Shown here: positions 465 through 44,864 of the stretch, piece by piece
Numbering within the stretch: position 1 is the first letter of the stretch
How the letters are laid out: each line of letters begins with the position of its first letter
DNA from: Paragordius varius
Taxonomy: Eukaryota > Animalia > Nematomorpha
Assembly: GCA_964247055.1 (NCBI GenBank)
Contig: OZ176055.1
Location: 4,092,001 to 4,156,000 of the forward strand
Reading direction: 5' to 3'
DNA: 64,000 bases
The notes under the pieces: model-generated
The model's input: only the letters and a program-made list of their open reading frames with translations
Told to the model about the DNA's origin: nothing
The model's database searches: none
Program-made: the position numbers and the translations under genes

Positions 465-3400
465 AATCACCTAAAATAGTTCTGCCACCTCAAAATTTAA
501 CAACTCTTGAGGGACTTGCAGCAAGATTCGATTGCGGTGCTCAGGCATTTCCATCCAACGTTACACATACCTGGCTTAAAGGTAAACCATTTTTTTAAAA
601 AGGATAAGGATTGTGGGAACGTAACATATTACCAATAATTTATTCCCTTATTTAGACGGGTCCCTCTTGTCACAAAAAACGGATTTTGGTTCTCGAATAA
701 TTTATCATGCCATGACAGGGGCAATGACCATTAATCCCACTTTTAAAAGCGATAATGGCCAATATAGCTGTGTGGTGGAAAACGGAGTTAATCCGAAAGC
801 TCAAGCTTCCGCCTATTTGGATATACAATGTATGGCTAGAAAAAAAATATTCTCTTTTTTTGAAAAAAAAACAATTAATAAATTTTTCCTAATAGATCCT
901 GCCAGTATAAACGACAAGGCTCTAAAAACGAAGCAGTATCTCCCTCAGGGATTGTTTGGTGCAATTCAATGTCCTGTGCTATCAAACCCTAATTTGGAAT
1001 TTGTTATTTGGACGAAAAATGGAAAAACTATTGATTCCTCATTAGAAACCATCTTAGCAAAAACCGATGAAAATAATAATAATGGCAATTATAGAACATC
1101 CACTCTTTTGCCAGAATTTAAGTGATCTTGCAAACCCTTAAAATATTTTTTAAGTTTTTGTAATATAAGTTTCCGTTCTCTGCTTAATAATACTTGAAAA
1201 TTACATTTCATTGCAATCTATGTTGTGAGAATGTTTGTCATTAAAATGGCTATAGGAATTATAAGTCTATATAACGTACCCTCAAAACTAATAATTAAAT
1301 ATATTCAAAGTGATTAAATATCCATTACTTGTTTTATTAATAATTGCCAAATAACATATTCAGAATAATGTTGTGTTTAAAGTTATTTTTTCACTTTTTC
1401 TTGCTATATATGGTATCTGGAAATACTTAATTATAAACTGGCATTAGTTATTCTCATCTTTTGTAAAACCCGAAAAATCGGGAGTCTAAAAATATAACAT
1501 TTATATATTTTGTTTAGTAATTTGATTCATCAAATCGAACCCTCCAATAATGTTGATATTGTACCAAGCGAAACCAATAATGATAATATTAATACATTAA
1601 CTTTGCAAAAAAATATTTCAGAGCCATATCGAATCGCAAGGAATGGCTCACTTTTTATATTTCAAGTCGATCGCAAAATTCACGAAGCTGTATACACCTG
1701 CACGCCATACAACAAAATAGGCACAAACGGTCCATCCGCCCCAATCCACGTTTATGTAAAAGGTATTTTAAACACGCAAAACTAATAATTCCAGCTTGTA
1801 CATATATAAATAAGATAATGATTTTTAAGTGCTTCTAAAGTTAAATCTAAAAAAAATATTGGCGCAATCATTTTTTATATCTTAAAATCTGAATTTTATT
1901 CTCATCACCCTATTAGATCCACCCATAATTATTAGAAGGCCAAACAAACAATATATAGTTGCGGCTGGGCAATCTTTGACAATACCATGTTCCTTCGGTG
2001 GGAAACCTAATCCCTCTACATTGTGGAAACGGGTAAATAAGTTAAAATTTATACTTTAAATTAAGAGTCTTTTTTGTTCTCTTAAAGGGGGAGAGGGCGT
2101 TGCATATTTATAATTTAAGGTCGGCCACTGGTTTTATAAGTAAACATTTTTTTATATTAAATGTGATATAATAAACTGATAAAAATTTATAAATTAGATT
2201 TGAACAAATTTATATTTTCTAAATTTATTAGGAAAACGGTAAAGATTTGCCAAGGGGTCATTTCTTTTATGCCCTCGGGAATTTGACTATTACTTCAGTG
2301 GGTAAAGAAGATCACGGGATAATTTATTGTATTGGTAGAAACAAAGTGGCAACCATAACGATTCCAATCTCAATAATTGTTTACAGTAAATTTTAATTAA
2401 TATTAATTATCAATTTCCAAGGTTTCAATATTACCTGGTAGTAAAGTTTAACTAATTAAATTATAAGATATTATCTGAATTTATGGGCCTTACCAGTTGT
2501 TTTACTAAAACTTAAAAAGCACCACCATAGTATTTAAATATACCATTTACAAATCGAATTCACCCTTGAATTCAAATACTCGAACAATTTAAATTCAACC
2601 TTGAACAATTGCAGTTTACCCTAAAAATAAATTATGTGTCGGGCTAATATAACTCATCATTAATAAGAAATATATTCATATGGCATAGTCTATTATTTTT
2701 TCAGTTTTATATTAATTTTAAACGTAATTTTGTTATTTTAAAATGTAAAAAAATATATAGGTAAATTTTAATCTTATCGAGAGTGAATTTGAATTGTTCC
2801 AGGGGGAATCTGAATTATTCAAGGGTTAATTCGAATTCTTTAAGGGTCAATTTGAACTGTAAATGGTATATATTTTGTAAAATATATTTTGGTTTATTCA
2901 TAGACACTTCGCCTCATGTGCCCATCAATATAAGTGTTCGATCTAGTGTTTATGGAGCTTATATACGATGGAAACCGGGTTATAATGGTGGACATACGAC
3001 TCGTTACATTGTATGGTAAATATACAAACTCATTAAAAAATATTATACCATTTCCCAGTCTAAATAAACGTTTTCCCAGTCAATCGAAACGTTTTCCCAG
3101 TCAATCGAAACGTTTTCCCAGTCAATCGAAACGTTTTCCCAGTCAATCAAAACGTTTTCCCAGTCAATCGAAACATTTTCCCAGTCAATAGAAACATTTT
3201 CCCAGTCAATAAAAACATTTTCCCAATCAATAAAAACGTTTTCCCAGTCAATAAAAACGGTTTTATTTTTGATGATAAGTATCAAAACAAGATAGAAAAA
3301 TAACTTTAACCATTATCAGCGTAATATTAGGATATTATTTTTCATAAAAAACAATTATTTAATGACAATATTTCCTATATATTCCAATACACAATCCTTA

Positions 3401-6400
3401 ATGATTTATTTTTTATAAACTATATTTTATTAACTGGATATTTTATGGTTTTTAAGTATTTTTAAGAAAATATTTAATAATTTTTTTATTTTATCGATGG
3501 TTCGCATTAATATTCGAGGCTAACTTTTAAAGTCTATAGTTACGGATAATAAAATTTATAAAAATATACCATTTTTATCTCAAATTGGTCATTTAACACT
3601 TCAAATTGGATCATAAACATGTCGAATTGTGTAAAAAATACTGTCAGAAATAAATTTGAACAAAACATGGTTTTATATATAAATTTCATTTAAAAATATT
3701 TTATAAAAAAGGATATTCTAACACAATGGCTTTGCGGGCCGCATCGGCGTTCTGAATTCGTATTACATAAGGACATTCATAAATAATTTATTCGATCTTA
3801 AACATAAGACTGTAAAGTACAAACACAATATATTTTTTAATTCGTTGTCAATTTTATAGACTCATTTAGAATAATAGCGTAAGAAATATGAATTTTATTA
3901 AGATCTTGTTGGCAAATTTTTACATTGGATTTTCCAAATTTTTCGCGGGACGCATAAAGATTCGGAAGGCCGCCTTAGGCCTCCGATGAACCAAATGATA
4001 AATATAAAAAATAGGGTAAAATTTGTGTTTATGACCCAATATGAAGTGTTAAATGACAAATTGAGATAAAAATGGTATATTTTTATAAATTTTATTATCC
4101 GTAACTATAGACTTTAAAAGTTAGCCTCGAATATTAATGCGAACCATCGATAAAATAAAAAAATTATTAAATATTTGCTTAAAAATACTTAAAAACCATA
4201 AAATATTCTTCCAGTTAATAAAATATAGCTTTAAAAAAATAAATTTAATGATTGTGTATTGGAATATATAGGAAATATTGTCATTAAATAATTGTGATTT
4301 TATGAAAAATAATATCCTAATATTACGCTGATAATGGTTAAAAGTTATTTTTCTAGCTTGTTTTGATACTTATCATCAGAAATAAAACCGTTTTTATTGA
4401 CTGGGAAAACGTTTTTATTGATTGGGAAAATGTTTTTATTGACTGGGAAAATGTTTCTATTGACTGGGAAAATGTTTCGATTGACTGGGAAAACGTTTTG
4501 ATTGACTGGGAAAACGTTTCGATTGACTGGGAAAACGTTTCGATTGACTGGGAAAATGTTTCGATTGACTGGGAAAACGTTTTGATTGACTGGGAAAACG
4601 TTTCGATTGACTGGGAAAACGTTTCGATTGACTGGGAAAATGTTTCGATTGACTGGGAAAACGTTTATTTAGACTGGGAAATGGTATATGTAAAATTATT
4701 AAAATTTTTAATGCTCCTTTTTATAGGTGTTCCAAGATTAAATCTACCTTCACAACACTGCCAAGTTTTAGGTCAGTGACATTAGATGCTAAAAACAATC
4801 ACAAATTAGATACAGAACCTGCTTATGCTTATTATTTTAACACCAGCTCAGGATATATTTTAGATCTTGAATCTGCCTCATCCTATACATTTCAATTGCA
4901 AGCCTACAATATGTATGGTTATAGCGAAAAAAGTCCACCCTTGTTAATCAATACTAAAAGTTATATTTCAACCAATTTAATTATATATTTTAAATGACTA
5001 GATTTTCATATTTTAGCTAATCTTTTTTGTGTCATTCAGAGTTTGAGAGTGAATATTACACAATGTCTTCCCTCCAGGGTTTAAGTCAACGGGCAGCTCA
5101 AGATATACAAGGTATAAATTATGATCTTTATCTAAAAACTAAATTAATTAATTGATAATGTTGGCCATTATGCCTAAGGTGATTGGTTTTATTTGTCATA
5201 TATTAGGTGAACTTCACTCCCCTACATATATATCCACGACTTACATAAAAGGAGGTAATGGAAAAGATGTTTTGAGTTCTGGGGGTAAAGATATGATTCA
5301 TCCCAAAGGAATTTTGATTAAGTGGGAGAATATTCCCCGTGGTTCAATAAATGGTCCGATTTTTTATATCTTAGAATACAGGTTTATAATCTCACATACA
5401 ATGTTTAATTATAGTAAAAAAGGCTAAATTAATTAATTTGTCTTAAAACTCTAGCATCAATGAGGAAATACAATGGTATAAATGGGAACCAGCTGTAAAA
5501 GCATCTGAACACGCAAATAAAAAATATATAACATTATTTATACGGGAGGAAGATCTTTTAAAAGCCCTAAAAACTTCAAGCATCCCATCAGTCCTACGGT
5601 TTCGAGTTCGTGCCTATGATTTGAATAGCAAAAGTGATCCATCCATTGTCTCCGAATTATATATTATAAGTAATCTTATTTTATATAATACTTTTGTTCA
5701 TTTACACTTATGGTGGGGTCTAAACGGTTATGAATGCAATTACGACCGTGACTATGACCAATTTTAAAAATAAACATTAAATTTATACAAGCATATGTTA
5801 TCACGCATGTAATATAAGAGTAAACAATGGTATAAAACTTATAATTTATGTAGTCAATTGTGAGATTTAGATAATTATCATATTTTTGTTAGTTGTCATC
5901 TTGTACTTTAAATAAAAGTTCGTAGCTAATTATAATATAGGTATAATAGATTTTTATATTTCACACATAATAGATAGCCCACGTAAACTCATGGGAACAC
6001 CTATCGTAGCCGGAATTATAACTGGAACTGCCTTATCCATTATACTTCTTACCCTTTTTACTATGTTAACTATGGCTTATTACAACAAGCTTACTGGTCG
6101 AAAAGGACGTAAGACTGGCAAAGTCGATTCATTTAGTAAATTTGGTTTATGCGGGGGCGCAGAAATACCTTACAATGGCGATATGATACATCGACCAAAT
6201 AAATTTGGGGAGCTGGATGGAGATTCTAACACAGATATCTATAGTTCATATATTACTAACCAACATGGCTCTTCACAAAACACAACATTAAATAAACAAG
6301 AAAATGGAGACTTGGGCCACACGCATGTTAATGGACATATTCACAACCAAATAAAGGATGTGTCTGACAAAGGACAACGTATGTTTTTAGTATCAATTCG

Positions 6401-9400
6401 TTTGACTAAAAATTAAATTAAACGACTTGAAATTCCTAGTCGAGAACTGATTCAATAACATTTCTATTTATATTTTTTATCGTAGTTTTTGACAAAATTT
6501 AAATATAATTTTTTAAACATATAACTTTATTACTTTTTTAGTAAATGGTGCTTACAAATCAAACAATGGACATATAAGGTATATTTTTAAATTTTATGAT
6601 TCCAAATTAGGTTATATTTATCAATAACTCTATCACATATATTTATAAAAGTTCTTGTAATACAGCTGGCTTACTTACATTATTGATGGTCAATTCGAAA
6701 TACAATGGAAACAAATTTTGTCCATAATTAATTAAACAAAGTAATGTAAGATGGGAAAAAATTATTTACATTTTGTTTTTTTCCATACACTAGTGTGTTG
6801 CCAATTGACCAACTATAACGTGAATAAGCCAGCATAAATGTGCCTACTGTAGTTAGCAAAGCGTAATGAGCTCAAAAATATTATACTGACGTATGGGGAA
6901 AAGGTTTCATATATTTTTCTATCTTAAAAAAATATTTATGGGAAAATCGGCAAGTTAAATTTGGCTAAAAATAGAGAAGATACTATTTTTTCAAATAGCA
7001 ATGACACATTTGCATAATTATCCGTGTTATTTAAATTAACCGATTGGTTTAAAATCACATTTTTTCTACTTTACCCCTGTTTCTCTTCCTAAACCTGCCT
7101 TTTCTTTCAGAAAGCCCGTCATTCAATTTACCCTAAAATTAAAAATATTAAATTATTGGATAATAAAAGTATAAGATCAAAAACATTTTAAAAAAATAGC
7201 GCCTAAAAAGAGTATTATAAACAAGGATTGTTTCCTTTTTTAGTTATTATATCTTTTATTGGACATAAAGCTTAAGAAATTCTTGTCTGATATTTGTCAA
7301 GATCTTACATCACACCCATAATGGTATATATATATACCATTTACAATTCATTTTCACCCTTAAACAATTCAAATTCATCCTTGAACAATTTAAATTCACC
7401 CTTATTCAAATTCACCCTTGAACAATTCAAATTCACCCTCAAATAAAATATATGTTTTTTAAGATTAAAAATTACCATTATTTTTATATATTTTTAAAAA
7501 AATAAAAATTTTGTTTTAAATTAAAATAATACTGAAAAAATAATAAACTATAACATAAACATATATTTAATATTAATAAGGAGTTATATTAGTTCGAAAA
7601 TATATAACTTATTTTTAGGGTGAATTTGAATTGTTTGAGGGTGAATTTGAATTGTTCAAGGGTGAATTTGAATTGTAAATGGTATATATATACCATTATT
7701 ACTTTAAATGTGTCCTTAAACACTTGGTGTTGGTCATTGAACATTTCAAGTTAGCCCTTTAACATTTTTATTTTGTTTTAACTTTTATCAATCAAATCAT
7801 GTATCATTCATCTATTTTCTTTATTTAACATACACTTTAAATCTATATTTATTTTTAATCATTCCGTATATCTTTATTTCTTAAAAAATATTAAATTATT
7901 AAGATTTTAACACGTAAATTAAAAATAAATAAGTTTCTGGGTTATCTTTACAATTTTCTAATAAAAACATTTAGTTAATAATTATTCTAAATTGGAAATG
8001 ATTAAAAAAAAGTGGTTTTTGGATAAAAAATTTTATTTTTAAATAAATATATAATAAATTAGGTTAGAAAATTATAAAATAAAAAAATGCAAAAATTATG
8101 GTCAAATTAAAATTTAGAAATTTTAAGGACCAACTTGCGCAAGGACTAGCTTAAGGTATTCAAGGATACTCTTGAAAGGCAAATGGTATATTAATGGCGA
8201 TTTTAAGGTTTAGATAAAGTATCCAATTAAAAATTTATCCTATTTTAGTGTCTGAAAGCGGAAAAACCAAAATAATTTGATATCACATCCATATTTAAAA
8301 TTTAAGATTTTTTATATTAAAAGTAATAAAAGTTAATAGGTCTATTTATTACATTTTATATATTATTTTTCTTTTTTGTGCACACAGGACGTTGGGTAAG
8401 TTTTTATTAAATAATTTCTTTAATAAAAATATCAGTCTTTATCCAAATTATCTTTATTTTATACCTTTGTTAGATCGATTGAGCCCAAAACCTCACATAA
8501 ACAGGGCTCCACATTATTACACACTGAATCACGGCAGCCCATATGGAATTCAAACAAAAATATCAGCGGGTCAAATATCTCCAACAATCCCGAATTATTC
8601 TCTTCATACAAATTTAACTTCCTCGTCCCATGTGATAAAAAGGGAGAGAAACAATTATCCGACTATCACAACGAATTTCACAAATATCCTTCAACACAAA
8701 AATTCTGGCAGTTACTCTTCAGCGGCTTTGGACCCATTGTATTACCCATGCCAAGAAATGGAGACGATAGATCTGTCATCAAAGCAAAAACGTATGAACC
8801 ATCCGCCCTTAAAAACAACTTTCACAAACGATATCAACAACGAAGTAATGGAGGAAATGCCAAAACTTGGCTCAAAATGTTCAATCCCATTAACGTTTTC
8901 GGGGGTACTTTTTCAAAACTTTTCGCCAGCAATGGTTCAAAAACAGAAGGATCACAATTTAAAATTAGCACCAAAAGAAACAATGGTATGATTGTTGATG
9001 AAACAGACATGGTGCAAGACAATGGAGGTATCGTTCCACAGAAAGGAACGGAATGTATATGCGAAAAAATAGAGAATATTACAGTTAATGATTCTCATAA
9101 AAACCAAAATGGTCATATACAGATAAAACAGGATGATAACATTATTTATATCCAGAATGCTAATAAGTCTGATAAAAATTCTCCAAAAAGTAAAATTTAC
9201 TGTAACTGTCCTGCAAACCTTAAATCGCCAAGTTTGGAATCTCAAACATCACAAAGCTCTAATATCTATAATTTCATTGAGAAAAAATCAAATCTGGGGT
9301 GCCGTTGCAAAAGATTATGCCATCAACCAGATATCCCCACCAATTTGGTACAAAGAGCATCATCACTTTTGTATAAATACTTACAAATAGTTGTGAATGA

Positions 9401-10214
9401 AGCTGTACACCGTATTATTGAACCACATGCAAATGAAATAATTCATCCGAACGAAAAGGCGAAGAATACAACAATGTCTAGTGATGATACTGTAACTTCT
9501 GGAACCTATTGTCTCGTTGACAACTGTAAAAACAATCCATCAAGATATGGTCTTTCAAAAAGCGATATACGTATAATTATGAATTCCACCACCTGTACCC
9601 TAGATGATGATTTCAGCAGCCATTTAGAACAAGTCATTGATAATAGTATTAAAGGTCAATGCGATTCATTTTTCGACTCAACCATTTGTTCTAACACTAC
9701 AATACCGTCTGAAAATAAATGTCAAGCAAAACAAGTGGGTAATCAAAAGCCAAAAATATTATCAAGAAATTCAACTATAGATTCTAGCAAAGCACCTCTG
9801 GACATTGGTTTGCAACCGATTTATGAACCTTTATATGAATCTATGGAACATCATTTAGAAAATTATACGTTAAAAACAAAAGATCTCACACTCACTGATT
9901 CTTTATCGAATCCAACTAGTCCAAATGGAACAAAACCCAATGATATGATTTACATTGATTATGTGAATCATAATACTTCTTCAAACCCTATAATATATGA
10001 CGAAAAAACAAATCCAGTTCCTATTAATAACGCTTCGGAATCAAATGAAAATCACAACAAAGAATTAGAAATCAGGTTTGTAGAAATGAATAAAAAGAAA
10101 GAACTTTCAAATTACTGCCATCCCACTCATTCTTTTTCTCAGCGTTTGCCCTCATTTACCAATTCAATGCAATCTTTCAATTTAGAAAATCGTCTTTCTT
10201 CAACCATTGTATAG
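465..10214 (+). CDS. tutl: Turtle/IGSF9 (Dasm1)-like Ig + 2xFN3 single-pass adhesion receptor; 5' part lies upstream of the window
   Basis: GT-AG exons with consistent phases: 465-581, 656-829, 896-1121, 1518-1762, 1917-2032, 2232-2385, 2904-3015, 4727-4959, 5040-5111, 5207-5381, 5455-5669, 5974-6378, optional 6542-6578, 8474-(8991 or 10214). Three Ig domains (..DNGQYSC, QYLPQGLFGAIQC..YTCTPYNKIGTNGPS, ..EDHGIIYC), two FN3 (PHVPINI..RWKPGYNGG; ..FRVRAYD), then a TM segment (IVAGIITGTALSIILLTLFTML). The QYLP..G..QC and Y.CTPYN..GT.G.S motifs match Drosophila Turtle as I recall them. Confidence 0.8.
2541..2868. mobile_element. MITE, TACCATTT family (short type), copy 1
   Basis: Termini TACCATTTAC...GTAAATGGTA flanked by TA. 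Subterminal degenerate 21-bp repeats (TTGAACAATTCAAATTCACCC) are inverted at the two ends. Lies in turtle intron 2386-2903. Confidence 0.85.
3046..4686. mobile_element. 1.64-kb foldback element with TACCATTT termini and 21-bp tandem arrays in both arms
   Basis: TA|TACCATTTCCCAGTC...GACTGGGAAATGGTA|TA. Arms ~3046-3620 and ~4025-4686 are reverse complements. There are 10 versus 14 copies of a 21-bp unit (TTGACTGGGAAAACGTTTCGA). Fills turtle intron 3016-4726. Confidence 0.9.
7335..7684. mobile_element. MITE, TACCATTT family (short type), copy 2
   Basis: TACCATTTACAATTC...GAATTGTAAATGGTA, with 21-bp subterminal repeats and a core shared with the copies at 2541, 32623, 39546 and 63597. Confidence 0.9.
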
Positions 10215-10322
10215 CACATATTTTGTATGTAGAATTATTTTTCTAGAATTTCCTTACTATTTTGGTGCTATAGATTATTTCACTTATTGGACCATATTTA
10301 CGAGTGTTTATAATATTTTTTG

Positions 10323-10386: not shown

Positions 10387-12214
10387 TTAATTTTTAATTT
10401 CAGCCATATATGTGTTTTCATCACTAGGAACCGTATTTGCTGTATCAATTGATTTAATGGTCGTTAATTGATCCGTTTCGTCATTTATAATTTTATTGTA
10501 GATGTCTGGATTTTCTTTCAGACATTGCATATACCACTCATGTAAATGATTAGTGCTTGAATTATTATCAGTATCATTTGAAATACCCGTTTTTTCCAAA
10601 TCAGATTTTGGAGTTATCTCGTTTGATTTGCCTTGAAATGTTGATTCTGGTAAAATGTTAACCGATTCCACTGAGGTGCGATTTGTTAAATTTTCCTCAT
10701 ATGTTTTAGGAATCATACAAGGCGAAGTTTCCAAATTTTTAGAATCCAAAGATGTTTCACTGCTTTCCAGAGATATATTATTTTTATAATATTTTGATTT
10801 TGCATCTCCACCCGTATTTTGCAAAAAATCATCTATCTTTGAGGCGCTCATTACAATGTCCAAGTTTTTATTCAAAATATAATTTTTAAAATATACAAGA
10901 TTACGTTGCTGCACCTTTAATGTTTCAGACTGAGATGCTATGATTCGTTTCAGATGTTGACATTGTTCTGACAAACATCTGACTTCACTTGTAAGTGTTA
11001 AGTTTTTTGCTTTATAGCATTCAAGATCGGAATACCATTCTTTTCCACCATCTAGGGCTGTTTTATGGTCCACCTTTTCGTTTTCCAATTGTTTTATGAC
11101 TTGACTCATTTGATTTTCCAAAGCACTCTGGACATTATCTTTTTCAACTATGTCTTTTCGTAGACCTTTGCAGACGCTATCAAGCAAAATATATTTTTCT
11201 TCCCATTTCGAACAATCCTTCTCTACATTAATTTTTTCATCATGTAACATTTTGAGTTGCTTTTCTCTTTGCTCAAATAATGCTTGGATTTTTCCTTTGT
11301 CCTTAGCCATCTTTTCTAATGTTACAGCAAGAGTTTTATTTTCTAAAACATAGTTTTCCAACTTGCTTTCACCATTTATAATTTGCTGTTCCAAATTCCT
11401 TTTATCTGTCATGAGTTGCGTTAGTCCATGTTTCATGTCTCCTATCAATTTGTTAAGAGTTGCTTTTTCTGATTCTGCCTTTGCTAGGCTTTCCGAACTT
11501 TCCATCAATTTGTATTGATAACGGGTACATTTACTTTGGAGCTTGGTTAATCGTTTATTTAATGTATCCCATTTCTGAATACTTTCCCATTCACTGTCAT
11601 AAGCGTTTGCAAGATGTTTATCTTTTAGCTGGATTTGATTCATGAGCATATCAATTTCTCTTCGCTGCTCGTCAATAATGGTATTATTATTATTGGTATT
11701 GGTTATTAATGTGACCTGGTGTTCTCCTCTTTTATCCACAACATCTAATCGTTTATAACGGGATAGTGAATCGGAAATTGGAGCTGGTTTATCATCAATT
11801 ACCTCTCGTTTCCTGGTAAAAATAAAGGTGATTATTTTCTATATATATTGTTCGATGGTATAGTCAGTGTCATAAATGTTTAACAATGTAATTAAATTTG
11901 AATAATATTAATCATATATTGTAACAATTTATATAAAAATCTACCTTATTATGCAAAATACGGATATTTTATAATTATAAAGGTGGAGCCAAAGCAGATT
12001 TTAACAAAGCGGTACTTATTGGGAGAATTAAAAAATTCAAAATTTTAGAAAATATAAAGGCACCGATACTTACCATCGGTACATGGCCTAATTTCACCAC
12101 TGATATATATATGTATATATAATCAATTTGAAATAATTATAATGGTTTATTTTACTCTAAGAAAAAATGTCCTTCGTATAGCTTTGATTTCGATGTCTTG
12201 GTCACTGAATTCAT
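10387..12214 (-). CDS. Uncharacterised coiled-coil protein (~494 aa), two exons
   Basis: Exon 12214-12156 (MNSVTKTSKSKLYEGHFFL, donor GA|GTAAAA) joins in phase 2 to exon 11812-10387, extending the listed 450-aa ORF. Long heptad-rich E/K/L/Q region followed by a low-complexity tail. No family recognised. Confidence 0.7.
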
Positions 12215-40700: not shown

Positions 40701-43700
40701 TTATTAAAATTATTTTATAAAATAGAGGTAAATGTTTTACTGTCATTGCCTTGCTTTCAAATTAAAAATATATAACACAGGTTTTTTATCTAAGGTTATG
40801 GGTAGTTACTGTGTTTTTCAAATCATAATATCAATTTAAAGCAAAATATTAACATTTTTAACCTTTTATAAAAAGCAAAAAATTATGGAAAAATATTAAT
40901 TGATATACCTGTATAACAAGGTAAGATCCATTTTTCTTTCGTTTTAAAACATCAAGCGCTTCAGGCGCAAATGATGGTGCAATTATTCCATCCGATACCT
41001 TATCGCAAAACGCAGTCAAAAATATATAAATATTTGCAAAACAGTCATAATTTAAAAACTTTGGTAGGTGTAAAAATGCAAAAAAACTTCTTTTTGAAGA
41101 AAATTCGCATAAAATCTTTGCTATTATTAATGTGTCCCCGTTTTTAGTTTTAAAAAACTATTTTCGTTAAAAAAATGATCTAATCACCTCTTTGGCTATT
41201 AGCGCCGCAGTTTGAACATCACATTCATGGGATAAAGCAATAAAATCGCCATAAGATGACATTCTATCCGAACCTAATTATATAAAAGCAATACTTAATA
41301 AATTATAAACAAGTTATTTGAAAGTATAATATATATGTACGTAAAATTTTGCTATCGCCTTTAAAACCGTGATTTTATAAATATAAACCTGACCGATGTA
41401 TTAATTTTTTTAAACAAATAATGCACAATTTCATCCATATTTTTTGTAATATAGATAATTTTTTGATAAAAATACTGCAGTCGAAATATTTCAGATTGTG
41501 TATAAAAATCTTTCAATATTCTCAGTATTTCGCACACTATGTTTAATAAGTTTAAAACAAAACTTACAACGCGCTCTCGTGAAAGCTATAGCCATAGGCG
41601 TCATGTGTTGAATATTGTTAATATCCAACATAAATACTTGGGAATCACGTTTGGTATCAACAAAAGGAGCAGAAATTCCAACTCCCGCAGGACTAACATG
41701 CTTAAATGAAGCCGCAACCGCATAGCAAAAGGTATCTGTGTAGAGTAATATGTCTGTATATAGATATCAATTATAAAATTTTTTTATTAAATCAATCATT
41801 TATATTTTTTCAAAAAAGTATTAAATCATCCAATGTTTGTATGTGGTTTTGCCTTAATATTTATTTTAAAACTTATTAATTTTACTCAGTTGAAAGCTTA
41901 TCCATTTTCCAAATTATTATATGAGTTTGATTAATTTCAATGAATCTGGTAATATACCAATCCATAAAGTATGATCTTTTTATCCTACAAAATATTATTA
42001 CAAAATTAATTTTTTATAACTAAATAAATATATAAAAGTGTTTTCAGAAAGACCCTATAACTCAATTTTAATTTTTCACCAATCTGATTCTAATACCTTT
42101 ACTTTATTTCAGAAAATTAGCAAATTTAATTTTAATTCATGTTTTTTACAGTGTAATAATTGAATATTAATAATAATAATCTACAATAAACAATAGATAA
42201 AATGAAAACTGTAAACACCAACCTTCACCGTTAGTTAAATGGCTTAAATCTCCATTAATCTCATTTGAAAAATGTGAATTATCGTTTAATCCGTTTGGCA
42301 TTTTGTTTATGCTTTTCAAGTTTTGTGCCAATTCTGAAACTAAAGCCCAGCCATTCAAAGCATCCAACATATTAATGTAACCGGGTGCCCCGTTTAGAAC
42401 TATGTAAATGAAATAAAAATATTTAAAAATAGATAAGCTTCATGCTTTAATAAAAATCTTAAAAATGGTAAGAAATTTGTTCATTTAATAAAATATTATA
42501 TTAGCATTTATTGTTTCCAAAAAAATATTAAAATTATCATTATATATCGATAAAAAATATAATTGGATACGAATTTGTATAAATATTAAGAAATGTAAAA
42601 GGTCATCCATCACAGTTGGACGTCTTCTTTAATTACTAACAATGCTTTTCAATATCGTTCACCATATTTTATCATATGCTCCAATTCATAATAATATATT
42701 TTAAAAAACATAAATGACAAATAATTTAACTTTCAAAAAATCATATTGATTTTATGTATCTAACGAAAAACTTTTGATAGGTAGCGGACCAAACGCATTA
42801 AATATTTGTGCCGGTTTTTGATTGGGATTCATTCCGTACCGCAAATCAATTTGATAAGAAAGGTTTTTTTCGCCCTCACCACAAGAAGATAGATCTTTTG
42901 AATATTGTTTCCGCAGGTAATTGGATATAGCATCATCGTATTGAGCTGTGTGAGAAAATGCCTAAAAATAATACATAATTTTGAGGTCATGATTAATACG
43001 GTAACATTATTGGTAAAATGATAGAAAAAAACCCTTTAAGTTTCAAATAGAAAAATAATTTACTATCCATTGTTATAAATACAAAAAAACCATTTTGCAA
43101 AAATTATTGCTTTTTTAAAAAATAACTTGTTTCATCATAGAAATGAATGAGCTTTAATTAATGTTTAGGTTTTAATAATATGGATATATTAAAGGTAAGG
43201 GTAGATATTATAACCAAAGATATGTAGATAAACTTTTTAAACAAAACAATGAGATTTATATATTTATAAACTATTAGCAATAAATAATTAATTCTCTCCT
43301 ATCAATGTATTTATTAAGTATTTTTGGGTTTGTAAAGTATTAAAAAATAAACACTTTTTATATTAAAATTCGTATAAAAATGTTATTATTCCCAATTTTA
43401 TAAAAAATGATTGAAGATATATTGGCTAAAATTATTGATAAAATTGAATTTTGCGATTATAACCTTACATCAATTATAAAAATGCTAATATTAAAAGTAA
43501 GGAATAAATATATAGAATACATAAAAAATGAAGATTCTTTCATTATGAGTGTCAAATAAATTTTGTAAATTATTTTGACACGTATTTATTATTAATACTT
43601 TTAAAGCAAGGTGTTTGCGTGTCTCCACCGAGATCATGTTTAACTCTTCATATTCTTGAATAAACACATCATAGTCTTGACAAGTGCATAAAACAGTAAC

Positions 43701-44864
43701 TCTTTCGGCATTTTTCGCAGCGGCCCTCAAAAGCGTCACACCCCCAATATCAATATTTTCTATGGCATCCTCAAAACTTATATCATCAATATTTTGCGTG
43801 ACTTGAGTGAAGGGATATAAATTGCATATGACAAGGCTATATAAGTATAGCGATATATTTATAATAAATGAAAATATTTTTCCTGTCCCAATTGTCTTAA
43901 TACTCAAAAATTAATGTCTATGACTTATTTGAAAATATTTTTACACCAAATAAGTATATCAAATATTTTAAGAAATATATCAGGGTCATAAAAAAAATTT
44001 AGGGACACGGTTTAAATATCACTGATTCAGACTATACTTCTGTCATATAATAGATAAAATGAAAATAAACAGATTATAAAAATATTGTGATTAAAATAGT
44101 TCACCATGCATCATATTCGTTTAATTTGTTATTGTAATATCCATTTCCTGGTTTATTTAAAAAAAATATAAATTAAACTTAGCATTATAGTTTATATCGA
44201 TTATAAATTGTATTGGAAAGGAAACGTTATTAGAGAATCGGAATCTAAAAAATTTATTGGAAAATTTTTTTCAATTAGTGATACATTGATAACCATCTTT
44301 ATTGTTTGCAGGTTTATTTATGGGTTTTTTAACATTTATAAAAGTAGAATCAACTGGTTGATATATTTTTTGTGGTTAATTATTACTTTGTATCGTAAAA
44401 TAGATATCCTGATTTTAAATAATATAACCAAAATTAGAACAATACCGAATTGGAAACGGAAACAAACATATTTAAAATTAAAACCATTAGGTGTAATCCG
44501 TTAATAAGTAGATTTTTAACCAAAAATAATCCCGGTAAAACTTTGTTAAAAATAGCTTACTCAATTTTTTCAAAATTAAAATCAGCCAAATCTTTGTCAT
44601 CATCTTTGTTGTTGTTTCTGGCAAGTATACCGGCATATATGGCTGGATGTAAGGTTTTTACTCTGCCACCCAATATTTCCACAAAACCGGTATATTTTGA
44701 AATATTAGTGACGGGTATACCTAAGTTTTCGATGTATTTGGAAGTATTGCCAGAAGCGATTAATTCATATTGCTTTGAAGATAAAAATTTAACAATTTTA
44801 TCGAGATATGTTTTATCAGATACACTAATAATTGCTAAATTTATAATCAATTAAAACCTCTCAT
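37764..44864 (-). CDS. ATIC: Bifunctional AICAR transformylase/IMP cyclohydrolase
   Basis: Exons 44864-44858, 44834-44561, 43836-43599, 42961-42772, 42399-42223, ~41750-41568, 41273-41188, 40998-40909, 40575-40441, 40149-39983, 39069-38949, 38387-38292, 37883-37764. A small exon between 38388 and 38948 may be missing. Motifs [78 protein letters not shown]. Confidence 0.95.
39546..39941. mobile_element. MITE, TACCATTT family (short type), copy 4
   Basis: TA|TACCATTTACAGTTC...GAACTGTAAATGGTA|TA with about five 21-bp units per arm. Lies in an ATIC intron. Confidence 0.9.

What the first reader, a model, noticed from the sequence alone, without database searches (positions are those of the whole stretch)
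6542..10214. Dual-coding last exon of turtle: a 37-nt microexon could switch between two cytoplasmic tails, both ending in class I PDZ-binding motifs
Seen: from the acceptor at 8472-8473, positions 8474-8991 (~172 codons) are stop-free in two frames despite high AT content. Splicing the phase-1 donor at 6379 directly to 8474 gives the short tail ending KETMV* (8991). Including the GT-AG-bounded exon 6542-6578 (37 nt, LNGAYKSNNGHIR) shifts the frame to the 488-aa ORF frame, ending SSTIV* (10214). Established: x-S/T-x-V-COOH is the class I PDZ ligand, and IGSF9/Dasm1 has a C-terminal PDZ-binding motif. Inference: one exon encodes two alternative scaffolding tails chosen by a frameshifting microexon. 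Two matching termini argue that both frames are selected.
Basis: partly seen in the sequence, partly recalled or inferred. Interest (0 to 1): 0.85.

Follow-up and report, generated by a model that had tools for sequence, protein, structure and literature searches.

The report
Receptor tail exon read two ways
The last exon of a cell-adhesion-receptor gene in a hairworm-like genome stays open in two reading frames for 172 codons and its DNA carries coding marks of both, so a 37-base mini-exon may switch the protein between a long and a short inner tail; no RNA was available to show the switch.

Summary
Positions 8474-8991 are stop-free in two frames: A ends KETMV* at 8991 and B ends SSTIV* at 10214. 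The donor at 6379 is phase 1, and a GT-AG-bounded 37-nt exon (6542-6578) moves the reading from A to B.

- **Frame B is real.** If A alone were coding, B would be open by chance in fewer than 1 of 10^6 simulations. Polymorphisms also favour B (4 of 8 synonymous in B, 0 of 8 in A).
- **Frame A is unlikely to be open by chance.** The simulated chance is 2e-4 to 1.3e-3. B's third codon positions are also abnormal only inside the overlap: C/(C+T) is 0.55 against 0.27 downstream (p=2e-6), which looks like a second codon position of A. None of 1951 synonymous resamples with A open reproduces the observed frame signal.
- **The 37-nt exon looks coding.** Its peptide repeats a motif of the frame-B tail.
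- **Not shown.** The four runs laid were all genomic DNA, so no splice junction was seen. Neither tail has a detectable homologue. The "turtle" identity is unproven, and other routes into each frame exist.

Best reading (about 0.45): a true dual-coding last exon, a known kind of arrangement (C. elegans tnt-3; human neuronal genes). The main rival (about 0.3) is that only frame B is used.

The parts
5974..6378 (+). Exon with the membrane-spanning segment and the first ~100 cytoplasmic residues. It ends one base into a codon (phase 1) before the donor GTATGT at 6379-6384.
   Evidence: ORF and translation. 4 of 4 listed polymorphisms are synonymous in this frame. Genomic contigs run across the donor, so those runs are DNA.
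6542..6578 (+). Candidate 37-nt frameshifting exon encoding (L)NGAYKSNNGHI(R). Including it puts the last exon in frame B.
   Evidence: T-rich tract plus AG upstream and AAG|GTATAT downstream. Best-scoring exon candidate of length 3n+1 in the intron. Its peptide matches the frame-B tail segment VNDSHKNQNGHI: score 39, shuffle maximum 35 of 300. Its 3' edge and donor resemble those of the upstream exon, p=0.014. Splicing was not observed.
8388..8395 (+). Second, very uncertain candidate mini-exon of 8 nt (CACAG|GACGTTGG|GTAAGT), 78 nt upstream of the last exon. With the 37-nt exon it gives frame A; alone it gives an immediate stop (RRWID*).
   Evidence: Top combined splice-site score in the intron with a generic matrix. 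Products. Single-copy by depth. This gene's other inferred donors rarely carry G at +5, so the GTAAGT match may mean little.
8474..8991 (+). Dual-frame part of the last exon: 172 codons open in frame A (ends ETMV, TGA at 8989-8991) and in frame B.
   Evidence: Chance estimates. C/(C+T) at B's third positions is 0.55 against 0.27 downstream and 0.18-0.40 in 24 control chunks. LL(A)-LL(B) is +4.1 against -13.9 +/- 4.0 in resamples. Polymorphisms.
8992..10214 (+). Frame-B-only part of the long tail: 407 codons, rich in Cys/Asn/Ser, ends STIV with TAG at 10212-10214.
   Evidence: Frame B beats frame A by 23 nats over 8992-9400. Frame A has 20 stops here. An in-frame AAC insertion after 9230 is seen in three runs. 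No homologue. AlphaFold2 from the single sequence gave mean pLDDT 32, which is uninformative.

Best explanation
The gene encodes a single-pass Ig/FN3 surface receptor. Its last exon is truly dual-coding.

- **Long form.** When the 37-nt exon 6542-6578 is spliced in, the last exon is read in frame B. This gives a ~590-residue cytoplasmic tail ending STIV.
- **Short form.** When the 37-nt exon is left out, the phase-1 donor at 6379 joins 8474 directly. The same 518 bases are then read in frame A, giving a 173-residue tail rich in Ser/Thr/Pro, predicted disordered, and ending ETMV.
- **How frame A is kept.** Frame A appears to be written largely into frame B's wobble positions.

Shown here: both frames are open, this is statistically unusual, and the sequence carries compositional marks of both frames. 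Inferred: both splice forms exist, the 37-nt exon is the switch, and the two termini bind PDZ domains.
For: **Frame B is coding across the overlap**
- It would be open by chance in fewer than 1 of 10^6 simulations if A alone were coding.
- It continues into a 407-codon region with a strong frame-B signal.
- 4 of 8 polymorphisms are synonymous in B, and 5 of 8 lie at B's third position.

**Frame A is also marked as coding**
- It is open by chance at only 2.2e-4 to 1.3e-3.
- B's third positions, which are A's second positions, have C/(C+T)=0.55 only in the overlap. The value is 0.27 in the rest of the exon, 0.34 in the upstream exon and 0.18-0.40 in 24 control chunks. Fisher p=2e-6, with a broad change point at 8735-9032 that includes A's stop.
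- This T-to-C shift is not what stop avoidance alone would produce.
- LL(A)-LL(B) is +4.1. Synonymous resamples of the B protein that happen to leave A open give -13.9 +/- 4.0, and 0 of 1951 reach the observed value.

**The 37-nt exon**
- It is the best exon candidate of length 3n+1 in the intron.
- Its peptide repeats a frame-B tail motif, with 0 of 300 shuffles reaching the score.

**Other points**
- Both stops lie in the last exon.
- A's terminus fits [ST]-x-V, which 1.4% of random open stretches do.
- Published precedents exist: the C. elegans tnt-3 28-nt exon and 54 dual-coding events (PMC13247117), and human neuronal genes (bioRxiv 10.64898/2026.05.28.727796).
Against: - No RNA was available. 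The four runs laid are genomic DNA, and no 6378/8474, 6378/6542 or 6578/8474 joint was listed. A junction pattern was absent from metagenome contigs.
- All 8 listed polymorphisms in the overlap change the frame-A protein, some radically (L>S, Q>P, L>H).
- Variation at B's wobble sites is not reduced in the overlap: 5 of 172 sites against 8 of 407 downstream.
- Neither tail has a homologue, so conservation is untested.
- A whole genome was scanned, so a chance event at about 1e-3 can turn up.
- The training set for the codon models is only ~2,500 codons from this window.
- Other routes into A or B exist.
Confidence: 0.45

Rival explanations
1. Only frame B is used. The 37-nt exon is constitutive and the gene makes one long tail. 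Frame A is open by chance in a segment whose frame-B protein is poor in Leu/Ile/Val/Met, and its ETMV end is a coincidence.
For: - The chance of A being open is not astronomically small: 2.2e-4 to 1.3e-3, with 4.4-5.6 stops expected. The finding was picked from a scan of a whole genome.
- Polymorphisms behave as if B alone mattered: 0 of 8 synonymous in A and 4 of 8 in B, with no deficit at B's wobble sites.
- No evidence of exon skipping.
Against: - It does not explain why B's third positions are C-rich and T-poor only within the overlap (p=2e-6).
- It does not explain why 0 of 1951 A-open resamples reach the observed frame-A likelihood.
- The ETMV end adds about 0.014.
Confidence: 0.3
2. Both frames are used, but the switch is not skipping of the 37-nt exon. 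Two alternatives fit. In one, the 37-nt exon is constitutive and an 8-nt exon (8388-8395) or the acceptor at 8387 is used optionally, returning the reading to A. In the other, the two GTs of the donor GTATGT (6379 and 6383, 4 nt apart) are used alternately, giving A and B without any mini-exon.
For: - All these products are open.
- 8388-8395 has the best combined splice-site score in the intron under a generic matrix.
- Frame A is open from 8299, i.e. through 8388-8473.
- This gene's other inferred donors are degenerate (GTATTT, GTAAAT, GTTATA, GTTTAT, GTAATC), so GTTTTT at 6383 cannot be dismissed.
Against: - An 8-nt exon is at the limit of what spliceosomes define.
- The stretch 8396-8473 is typical AT-rich intron.
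- The GT at 6383 has no consensus support beyond GT.
- The motif repeat in the 37-nt exon argues only that this exon is coding, not that it is optional.
- No RNA.
Confidence: 0.12
3. There is one mosaic tail. The exon is entered in frame A and a very short intron inside 8474-8991 shifts the reading to frame B. This genome is reported to have introns of 20-32 nt.
For: - Earlier notes of this scan report 20-32-nt introns in this genome.
- Frame-A-like composition is strongest in 8475-8834 and the B signal takes over after about 8900.
- Two GT-AG candidates of length 3n+2 exist: 8739-8770 (32 nt) and 8895-8929 (35 nt).
Against: - Frame B would have to be open by chance upstream of the switch, at a rate of 11-14 expected stops per 172 codons. 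That is less likely than the frame-B-only rival.
- The candidates are as GC-rich as exon sequence (AT 0.56-0.57 against 0.78 in introns), have poor donors and lie at or beyond the reported size range.
- The four polymorphisms at 8615-8867 are synonymous in B and all change A.
- The cumulative A-minus-B likelihood is flat rather than V-shaped.
Confidence: 0.05
4. Frame A is the receptor's only tail, by direct 6378/8474 splicing. The 488-codon ORF from the ATG at 8748 is a separate overlapping product of another transcript.
For: - The ORF starts with ATG at 8748.
- Frame A looks like a normal disordered Ser/Thr/Pro-rich tail.
Against: - Frame B is open 91 codons upstream of that ATG, right back to the acceptor. 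That would be chance at roughly 1e-3.
- 8475-8747 does not show a frame-A-only signal.
- The polymorphisms at 8615 and 8717 are synonymous in B.
- No promoter or separate-transcript evidence.
Confidence: 0.04

Closest known systems
[quoted passage not shown]
   Same: A tiny exon whose length is not a multiple of three (28 nt there, 37 nt here) decides in which frame the downstream sequence is read. Both frames stay open and one product is predicted disordered. Dual-coding stretches of up to 829 nt are reported there.
   Different: In tnt-3 both junctions, the regulation and the isoform-specific phenotypes were shown. Here nothing is shown at the RNA or protein level. At 518 nt the stretch is longer than most of the C. 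elegans cases, which are mostly under 200 nt. The gene is a surface receptor and the recoded part is its whole membrane-distal tail.
Human dual-coding regions from alternative splicing under selection in both frames (bioRxiv 10.64898/2026.05.28.727796; also PMC1868773)
   Same: Alternative C-terminal tails are read from one exon in two frames, and such regions are enriched in genes of neurons, synapses and neurites. Constraint at wobble positions is the diagnostic, and an analogous wobble-composition anomaly is seen here.
   Different: Those cases rest on peptides and on conservation across vertebrates. Here there is one genome plus a few polymorphisms, and no relatives.
IgSF9 / Dasm1 / Turtle family of Ig-superfamily adhesion receptors (PMC3678166, PMC2739522)
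   Same: Ig domains followed by two FN3 domains, one membrane span, a long poorly conserved cytoplasmic tail and a C-terminal [ST]-x-V type end. Drosophila turtle has several isoforms that differ at the C-terminus.
   Different: Orthology was not shown. Only part of the ectodomain lies in the window, and the best solved-structure matches of the Ig exons are Dscam and contactin. NCAM/Fasciclin 2-type receptors have the same layout (own knowledge). I found no report of a dual-frame tail for this family in the papers read.
Plasma-membrane Ca2+ ATPase site-C splicing, 'a' and 'b' tails (own knowledge, not checked here)
   Same: An optional exon of non-triplet length makes the last coding sequence be read in two frames, and this changes whether the protein ends in a PDZ ligand.
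   Different: There only one of the two tails ends in the PDZ ligand. Here both would.

Membership tests
Dual-coding region made by non-triplet alternative splicing | An exon or splice-site choice of non-triplet length lies upstream of a stretch open in both resulting frames (60 nt or more in PMC13247117) | tested here: met
   A 37-nt GT-AG-bounded exon, and 516 nt open in both frames.
Dual-coding region made by non-triplet alternative splicing | Both splice forms present in RNA | not testable with these tools
   No run on record as RNA holds the locus. The four runs laid are DNA contigs that cross the exon-intron borders. The junction pattern is absent from metagenome contigs.
Dual-coding region made by non-triplet alternative splicing | Both forms escape nonsense-mediated decay (stop in the last exon) | tested here: met
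   Both stops (8989-8991 and 10212-10214) lie in the last exon. This is geometry only.
Dual-coding region made by non-triplet alternative splicing | Signs of selection in both frames (constraint at wobble positions) | tested here: inconclusive
   For: C/(C+T) at B's wobble positions is 0.55 against 0.27 (p=2e-6), and 0 of 1951 resamples reach the observed frame-A likelihood. Against: 0 of 8 polymorphisms are synonymous in A, and there is no deficit of wobble polymorphisms. No cross-species data.
IgSF9 / Dasm1 / Turtle | Five Ig domains, two FN3 domains, one membrane span | tested here: inconclusive
   The window holds pieces of at least three Ig domains, two FN3 domains and the membrane span. 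The 5' part of the gene lies outside the window.
IgSF9 / Dasm1 / Turtle | Sequence orthology to IgSF9/Turtle rather than to other Ig-superfamily adhesion receptors | tested here: inconclusive
   Solved-structure matches are Dscam, contactins, Robo and LAR. Full-length relatives could not be reached because the exon-sized queries fall under the length filter. The tails have no hits.
Class I PDZ ligand | C-terminal X-[S/T]-X-hydrophobic, free carboxylate | tested here: met
   E-T-M-V and S-T-I-V. Pattern only: 1.4% of random open stretches end in [ST]-x-V.
Class I PDZ ligand | Binding to a PDZ domain | not testable with these tools
   Needs a binding assay.
Ultra-short (20-32 nt) introns of this genome acting as the frame switch | A GT-AG segment of 20-32 nt and length 3n+2 inside 8474-8991, with intron-like composition | tested here: not met
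   Only 8739-8770 (32 nt, AT 0.56) falls in the size range. 8895-8929 is 35 nt. Both have exon-like composition and weak donors.

The most novel reading that the evidence does not exclude
Both tails are made and both are kept by selection. A frameshifting 37-nt exon lets one adhesion receptor choose between a ~590-residue Cys-rich tail and a 173-residue disordered tail, and each presents its own PDZ-type C-terminus. The 172-codon second frame would have been written into the wobble positions of the first. That would make it one of the longest splice-selected dual-coding stretches outside vertebrates, and the first in which both frames end in a scaffold-binding motif.
Probability: 0.3. Interest if true: 0.65.

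Novelty: new member of a known kind. Interest (0 to 1): 0.5.

Why it matters
- **If both frames are used.** This would be a long (518-nt) example of a receptor tail recoded by a tiny non-triplet exon, in a phylum with almost no molecular data. It would add to recent evidence from C. elegans and human that frame-shifting splice choices make functional alternative C-termini, especially in neuronal genes.
- **A reusable test.** The wobble-composition test used here compares third-position C/(C+T) inside and outside the overlap, and compares frame likelihoods with synonymous resamples. It needs only one genome, so it could be applied to other orphan cases.
- **If only frame B is used.** The practical message is for annotation. 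The gene needs the 37-nt exon to reach its 595-codon tail, and a gene finder that misses the exon would call a false short tail.

Tried and rejected
- **RNA evidence.** Both run searches listed no holder on record as RNA. The single read-laying run (4,351 letters, under the 6,000 limit) showed that X1, X3, X4 and X5 are genomic DNA.
- **Homologues of the tails.**
  - Frame B: word-indexed search and full HMMER scan of 1.84 billion representatives, both empty.
  - Frame A: empty.
  - Membrane-span exon: empty.
  - ESM Atlas look-alikes: nothing usable.
  - Exact look-ups of two ORF products: not on record.
  - So the test of conservation in related species could not be run.
- **Structure.** AlphaFold2 from single sequences gave mean pLDDT 32 and 35. 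This is uninformative, so no fold search was made.
- **Plain codon-usage scoring.** It did not separate the frames: B -3.950 and A -3.983 per codon. The frame-contrast scores were contradictory, so I replaced them with phase-specific models and resampling.
- **Internal similarity.** Neither the frame-A nor the frame-B overlap peptide resembles the rest of the protein significantly.
- **Very short intron as the switch.** Rejected as the leading model.
- **Assembly frameshift.** Rejected. No indel was listed in 8474-8991 among those shown for the four runs, and the only indel in the exon is an in-frame AAC after 9230.
- **Earlier notes of the scan.** Searches by sequence and for "turtle" gave nothing.
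Full report
**1. What is there**

The window starts inside a gene on the + strand.
- Its exons encode Ig-domain pieces (ORFs at 625-1125, 1498-1785 and 2232-2396).
- Two fibronectin type III domains follow (about 2890-3016 with 4776-4960, and 5250-5380 with 5447-5665).
- Then comes a membrane-spanning exon, with an ORF at 5991-6378.
- That exon ends one base into a codon, before GTATGT at 6379.
- The next long coding sequence starts at 8474, after a T-rich tract and the AG at 8472-8473.

From 8474 the three frames behave as follows.
- Frame A (codons from 8476) is open to the TGA at 8989-8991 and ends KETMV.
- Frame B (codons from 8475) is open to the TAG at 10212-10214, 595 codons counted from 8427, and ends SSTIV.
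- The third frame stops after two codons.

The segment 6542-6578 is 37 nt, with a T-rich tract plus AG before it and GTATAT after it. Every stated coordinate is therefore correct.

Earlier notes of this scan place the genome with horsehair worms and report introns of 20-32 nt in it. I used that as a lead for one rival model.

**2. Is the double open frame more than chance?**

- If B is the true frame, A is open in 224 of 10^6 codon shuffles. It is open in about 1.3 of 10^3 synonymous resamples of the B protein drawn from this window's codon usage. Between 4.4 and 5.6 stops are expected.
- If A were the only true frame, B would be open in 0 of 10^6 simulations, with 11-14 stops expected.
- B is therefore certainly a selected frame over the whole overlap. 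It runs on into 407 codons where frame B beats frame A by 23 nats per 409 nt.
- A's openness is unusual but not impossible. The finding was picked from a scan of a whole genome, so one event at about 1e-3 could arise by chance.

**3. Independent marks of frame A**

*Wobble composition.*
- In every other coding piece of this gene, and in seven other ORFs of the window, third codon positions are T-rich. C/(C+T) is 0.18-0.40 in 24 control chunks, 0.27 in the B-only tail and 0.34 in the membrane-span exon.
- Inside the overlap, B's third positions have C/(C+T)=0.55 (51 C, 41 T). Fisher p against the B-only tail is 2e-6.
- The best change point is broad (8735-9032) and includes A's stop.
- B's third position is A's second position. 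The observed mix (A .37, C .30, G .10, T .24) is that of a second codon position in this tail.
- This makes the frame-A protein rich in Ser, Thr and Pro and poor in hydrophobic residues, as expected for a disordered tail.
- Stop avoidance in A would remove A/G after T. It would not turn T into C.

*Frame likelihoods.*
- With a phase-specific first-order model, LL(A)-LL(B) is +4.1 in the overlap.
- Normal 172-codon chunks give -11 to -43.
- Synonymous resamples of the B protein that happen to leave A open give -13.9 +/- 4.0, with a maximum of 0.1. None of 1951 reaches the observed value.
- The cumulative A-minus-B curve is flat to slightly rising until about 8900 and then falls steadily. That is a blend of two frames, not a hand-over from one to the other.

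**4. What the polymorphisms say**

- The four runs that hold the locus are genomic. Their contigs cross 6378/6379 and 8473/8474, and intron repeats reach enormous depth.
- They list 8 single-base differences in the overlap. All 8 change the frame-A protein. Four are synonymous in B, and five lie at B's third position.
- This supports B. The chance of five or more of eight falling at one named position is about 0.09 (my own binomial calculation), and under A-only coding the pattern would be odd.
- It shows no protection of A. Wobble-site differences are no rarer in the overlap (5 of 172) than downstream (8 of 407).
- The B-only tail itself looks almost unconstrained residue by residue (7 synonymous, 17 not). 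A fast-evolving tail kept only for openness, general character and terminus would therefore look the same. The table also showed only part of the differences.
- No listed allele closes either frame. No indel was listed in the overlap, and the only one in the exon is an in-frame AAC after 9230. Assembly error is therefore unlikely.

**5. The 37-nt exon**

- I enumerated all 82 AG...GT segments in the intron that stay open when entered in phase 1. Among those of length 3n+1, 6542-6578 scores best.
- Its peptide LNGAYKSNNGHI matches VNDSHKNQNGHI in the frame-B tail (nt 9086-9121). The score is 39 against a shuffle maximum of 35 in 300.
- NGHI also occurs near the end of the membrane-span exon.
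- The exon's 3' edge, donor and following intron resemble those of the upstream exon (p=0.014). It suggests the exon arose by duplication.
- These points argue that the exon is coding in the predicted frame. They do not show that it is ever skipped.

**6. Other routes into each frame**

- *An 8-nt segment at 8388-8395.* It has a long pyrimidine tract, CAG before it and GTAAGT after it, and it sits 78 nt upstream of the last exon. With the 37-nt exon it gives frame A. Alone it gives RRWID and a stop.
- *The acceptor at 8387 with the 37-nt exon.* This also gives frame A, which is open from 8299.
- *The second GT of the donor (6383).* It would give frame B without any mini-exon. This gene's other inferred donors are degenerate (GTATTT, GTAAAT, GTTATA, GTTTAT, GTAATC, read by eye). 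Neither the weakness of GTTTTT nor the strength of GTAAGT therefore weighs much.
- *A 34-nt candidate at 6857-6890.* It lies beside a repeat.
- *Very short GT-AG introns that would shift A to B inside the overlap.* Only 8739-8770 (32 nt) and 8895-8929 (35 nt) exist. Both have exon-like composition. This model also needs B to be open by chance upstream of the switch.

**7. Identity and relatives**

- Pfam sees only generic Ig and weak FN3 matches.
- The best solved-structure matches are contactins, Dscam, Robo and LAR.
- The layout fits IgSF9/Turtle: five Ig domains, two FN3 domains, a membrane span and a PDZ motif (PMC3678166), with cytoplasmic domains that are poorly conserved (PMC2739522). 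It fits other receptors of this superfamily equally well.
- Neither tail has any detectable relative.
- AlphaFold2 from single sequences was uninformative.
- ETMV and STIV fit the class I PDZ-ligand pattern. By chance, 1.4% of random open stretches in this window end in [ST]-x-V.

**8. Comparison with what is known**

- Non-triplet exons that make downstream sequence dual-coding are documented. C. elegans has 54 such events, up to 829 nt long, including the 28-nt tnt-3 exon whose two isoforms have different functions (PMC13247117).
- In human, 105 transcript pairs show selection in both frames, mostly in genes of neurons and synapses (bioRxiv 10.64898/2026.05.28.727796).
- The present case would therefore be a new member of a known kind. 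It would be notable for its length, its phylum and the two PDZ-type ends.

**9. Verdict**

| Reading | Confidence |
|---|---|
| Both tails are made, with the 37-nt exon as the switch | about 0.45 |
| Both frames are used, but through another switch | about 0.12 |
| Only frame B is used and A is open by chance | about 0.30 |
| Mosaic tail through a very short intron | about 0.05 |
| Frame A is the tail and frame B is a separate product | about 0.04 |

The decisive evidence, RNA junctions and related genomes, could not be obtained with these tools.

Noticed in passing
window 7327-7692: MITE-like element inside the intron. It has 76-nt terminal inverted repeats (91% complementary) built from a ~21-nt unit (...TTCAAATTCACCCT...), with TA-rich flanks. 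Its word depth in the DNA runs is about 10^3-10^4 times that of the neighbouring single-copy sequence. Related units also occur at about 2783-2880 in an upstream intron.
   Followed up: partly
window 3043-3285 and 4363-4779: Tandem arrays of a ~24-nt unit, reading WENVSID... in one frame on either strand, inside the long intron that splits the first FN3 domain. They produce spurious ORFs of 80-138 codons.
   Followed up: no
window 8378-8401: GC-rich island in an AT-rich intron: pyrimidine tract, then CAG|GACGTTGG|GTAAGT. It is either an 8-nt exon or a decoy or recursive-type splice site, 78 nt upstream of the last exon. It is single-copy by depth.
   Followed up: partly
window 8992-10214 (frame B): The long tail is unusually Cys-rich for a cytoplasmic domain. 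It has three C-x-C motifs (CIC, CNC, CRC) within about 80 residues, followed by a predicted long helix (residues ~289-323 of the 579-residue query). It has no family match, and polymorphisms are nearly neutral (7 synonymous, 17 not).
   Followed up: partly
window 10387-11739 (- strand): A 450-codon ORF, convergent with the receptor gene and ending 170 nt from its stop. It is coiled-coil-like and rich in Lys/Glu/Gln. I used it only as codon-usage training.
   Followed up: no
window 43491-44850 (- strand): Exons of an ATIC (purH)-like gene. The methylglyoxal-synthase-like domain motifs are visible in the ORF translations.
   Followed up: no
window 5950-10300, runs X1, X4, X5: High heterozygosity or haplotype divergence: two contigs from one sample differ at 5 of 125 bases (8692-8816). 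Run X3 is labelled as another organism, yet its contigs differ from the window at only 0-3 bases each, at low depth.
   Followed up: no
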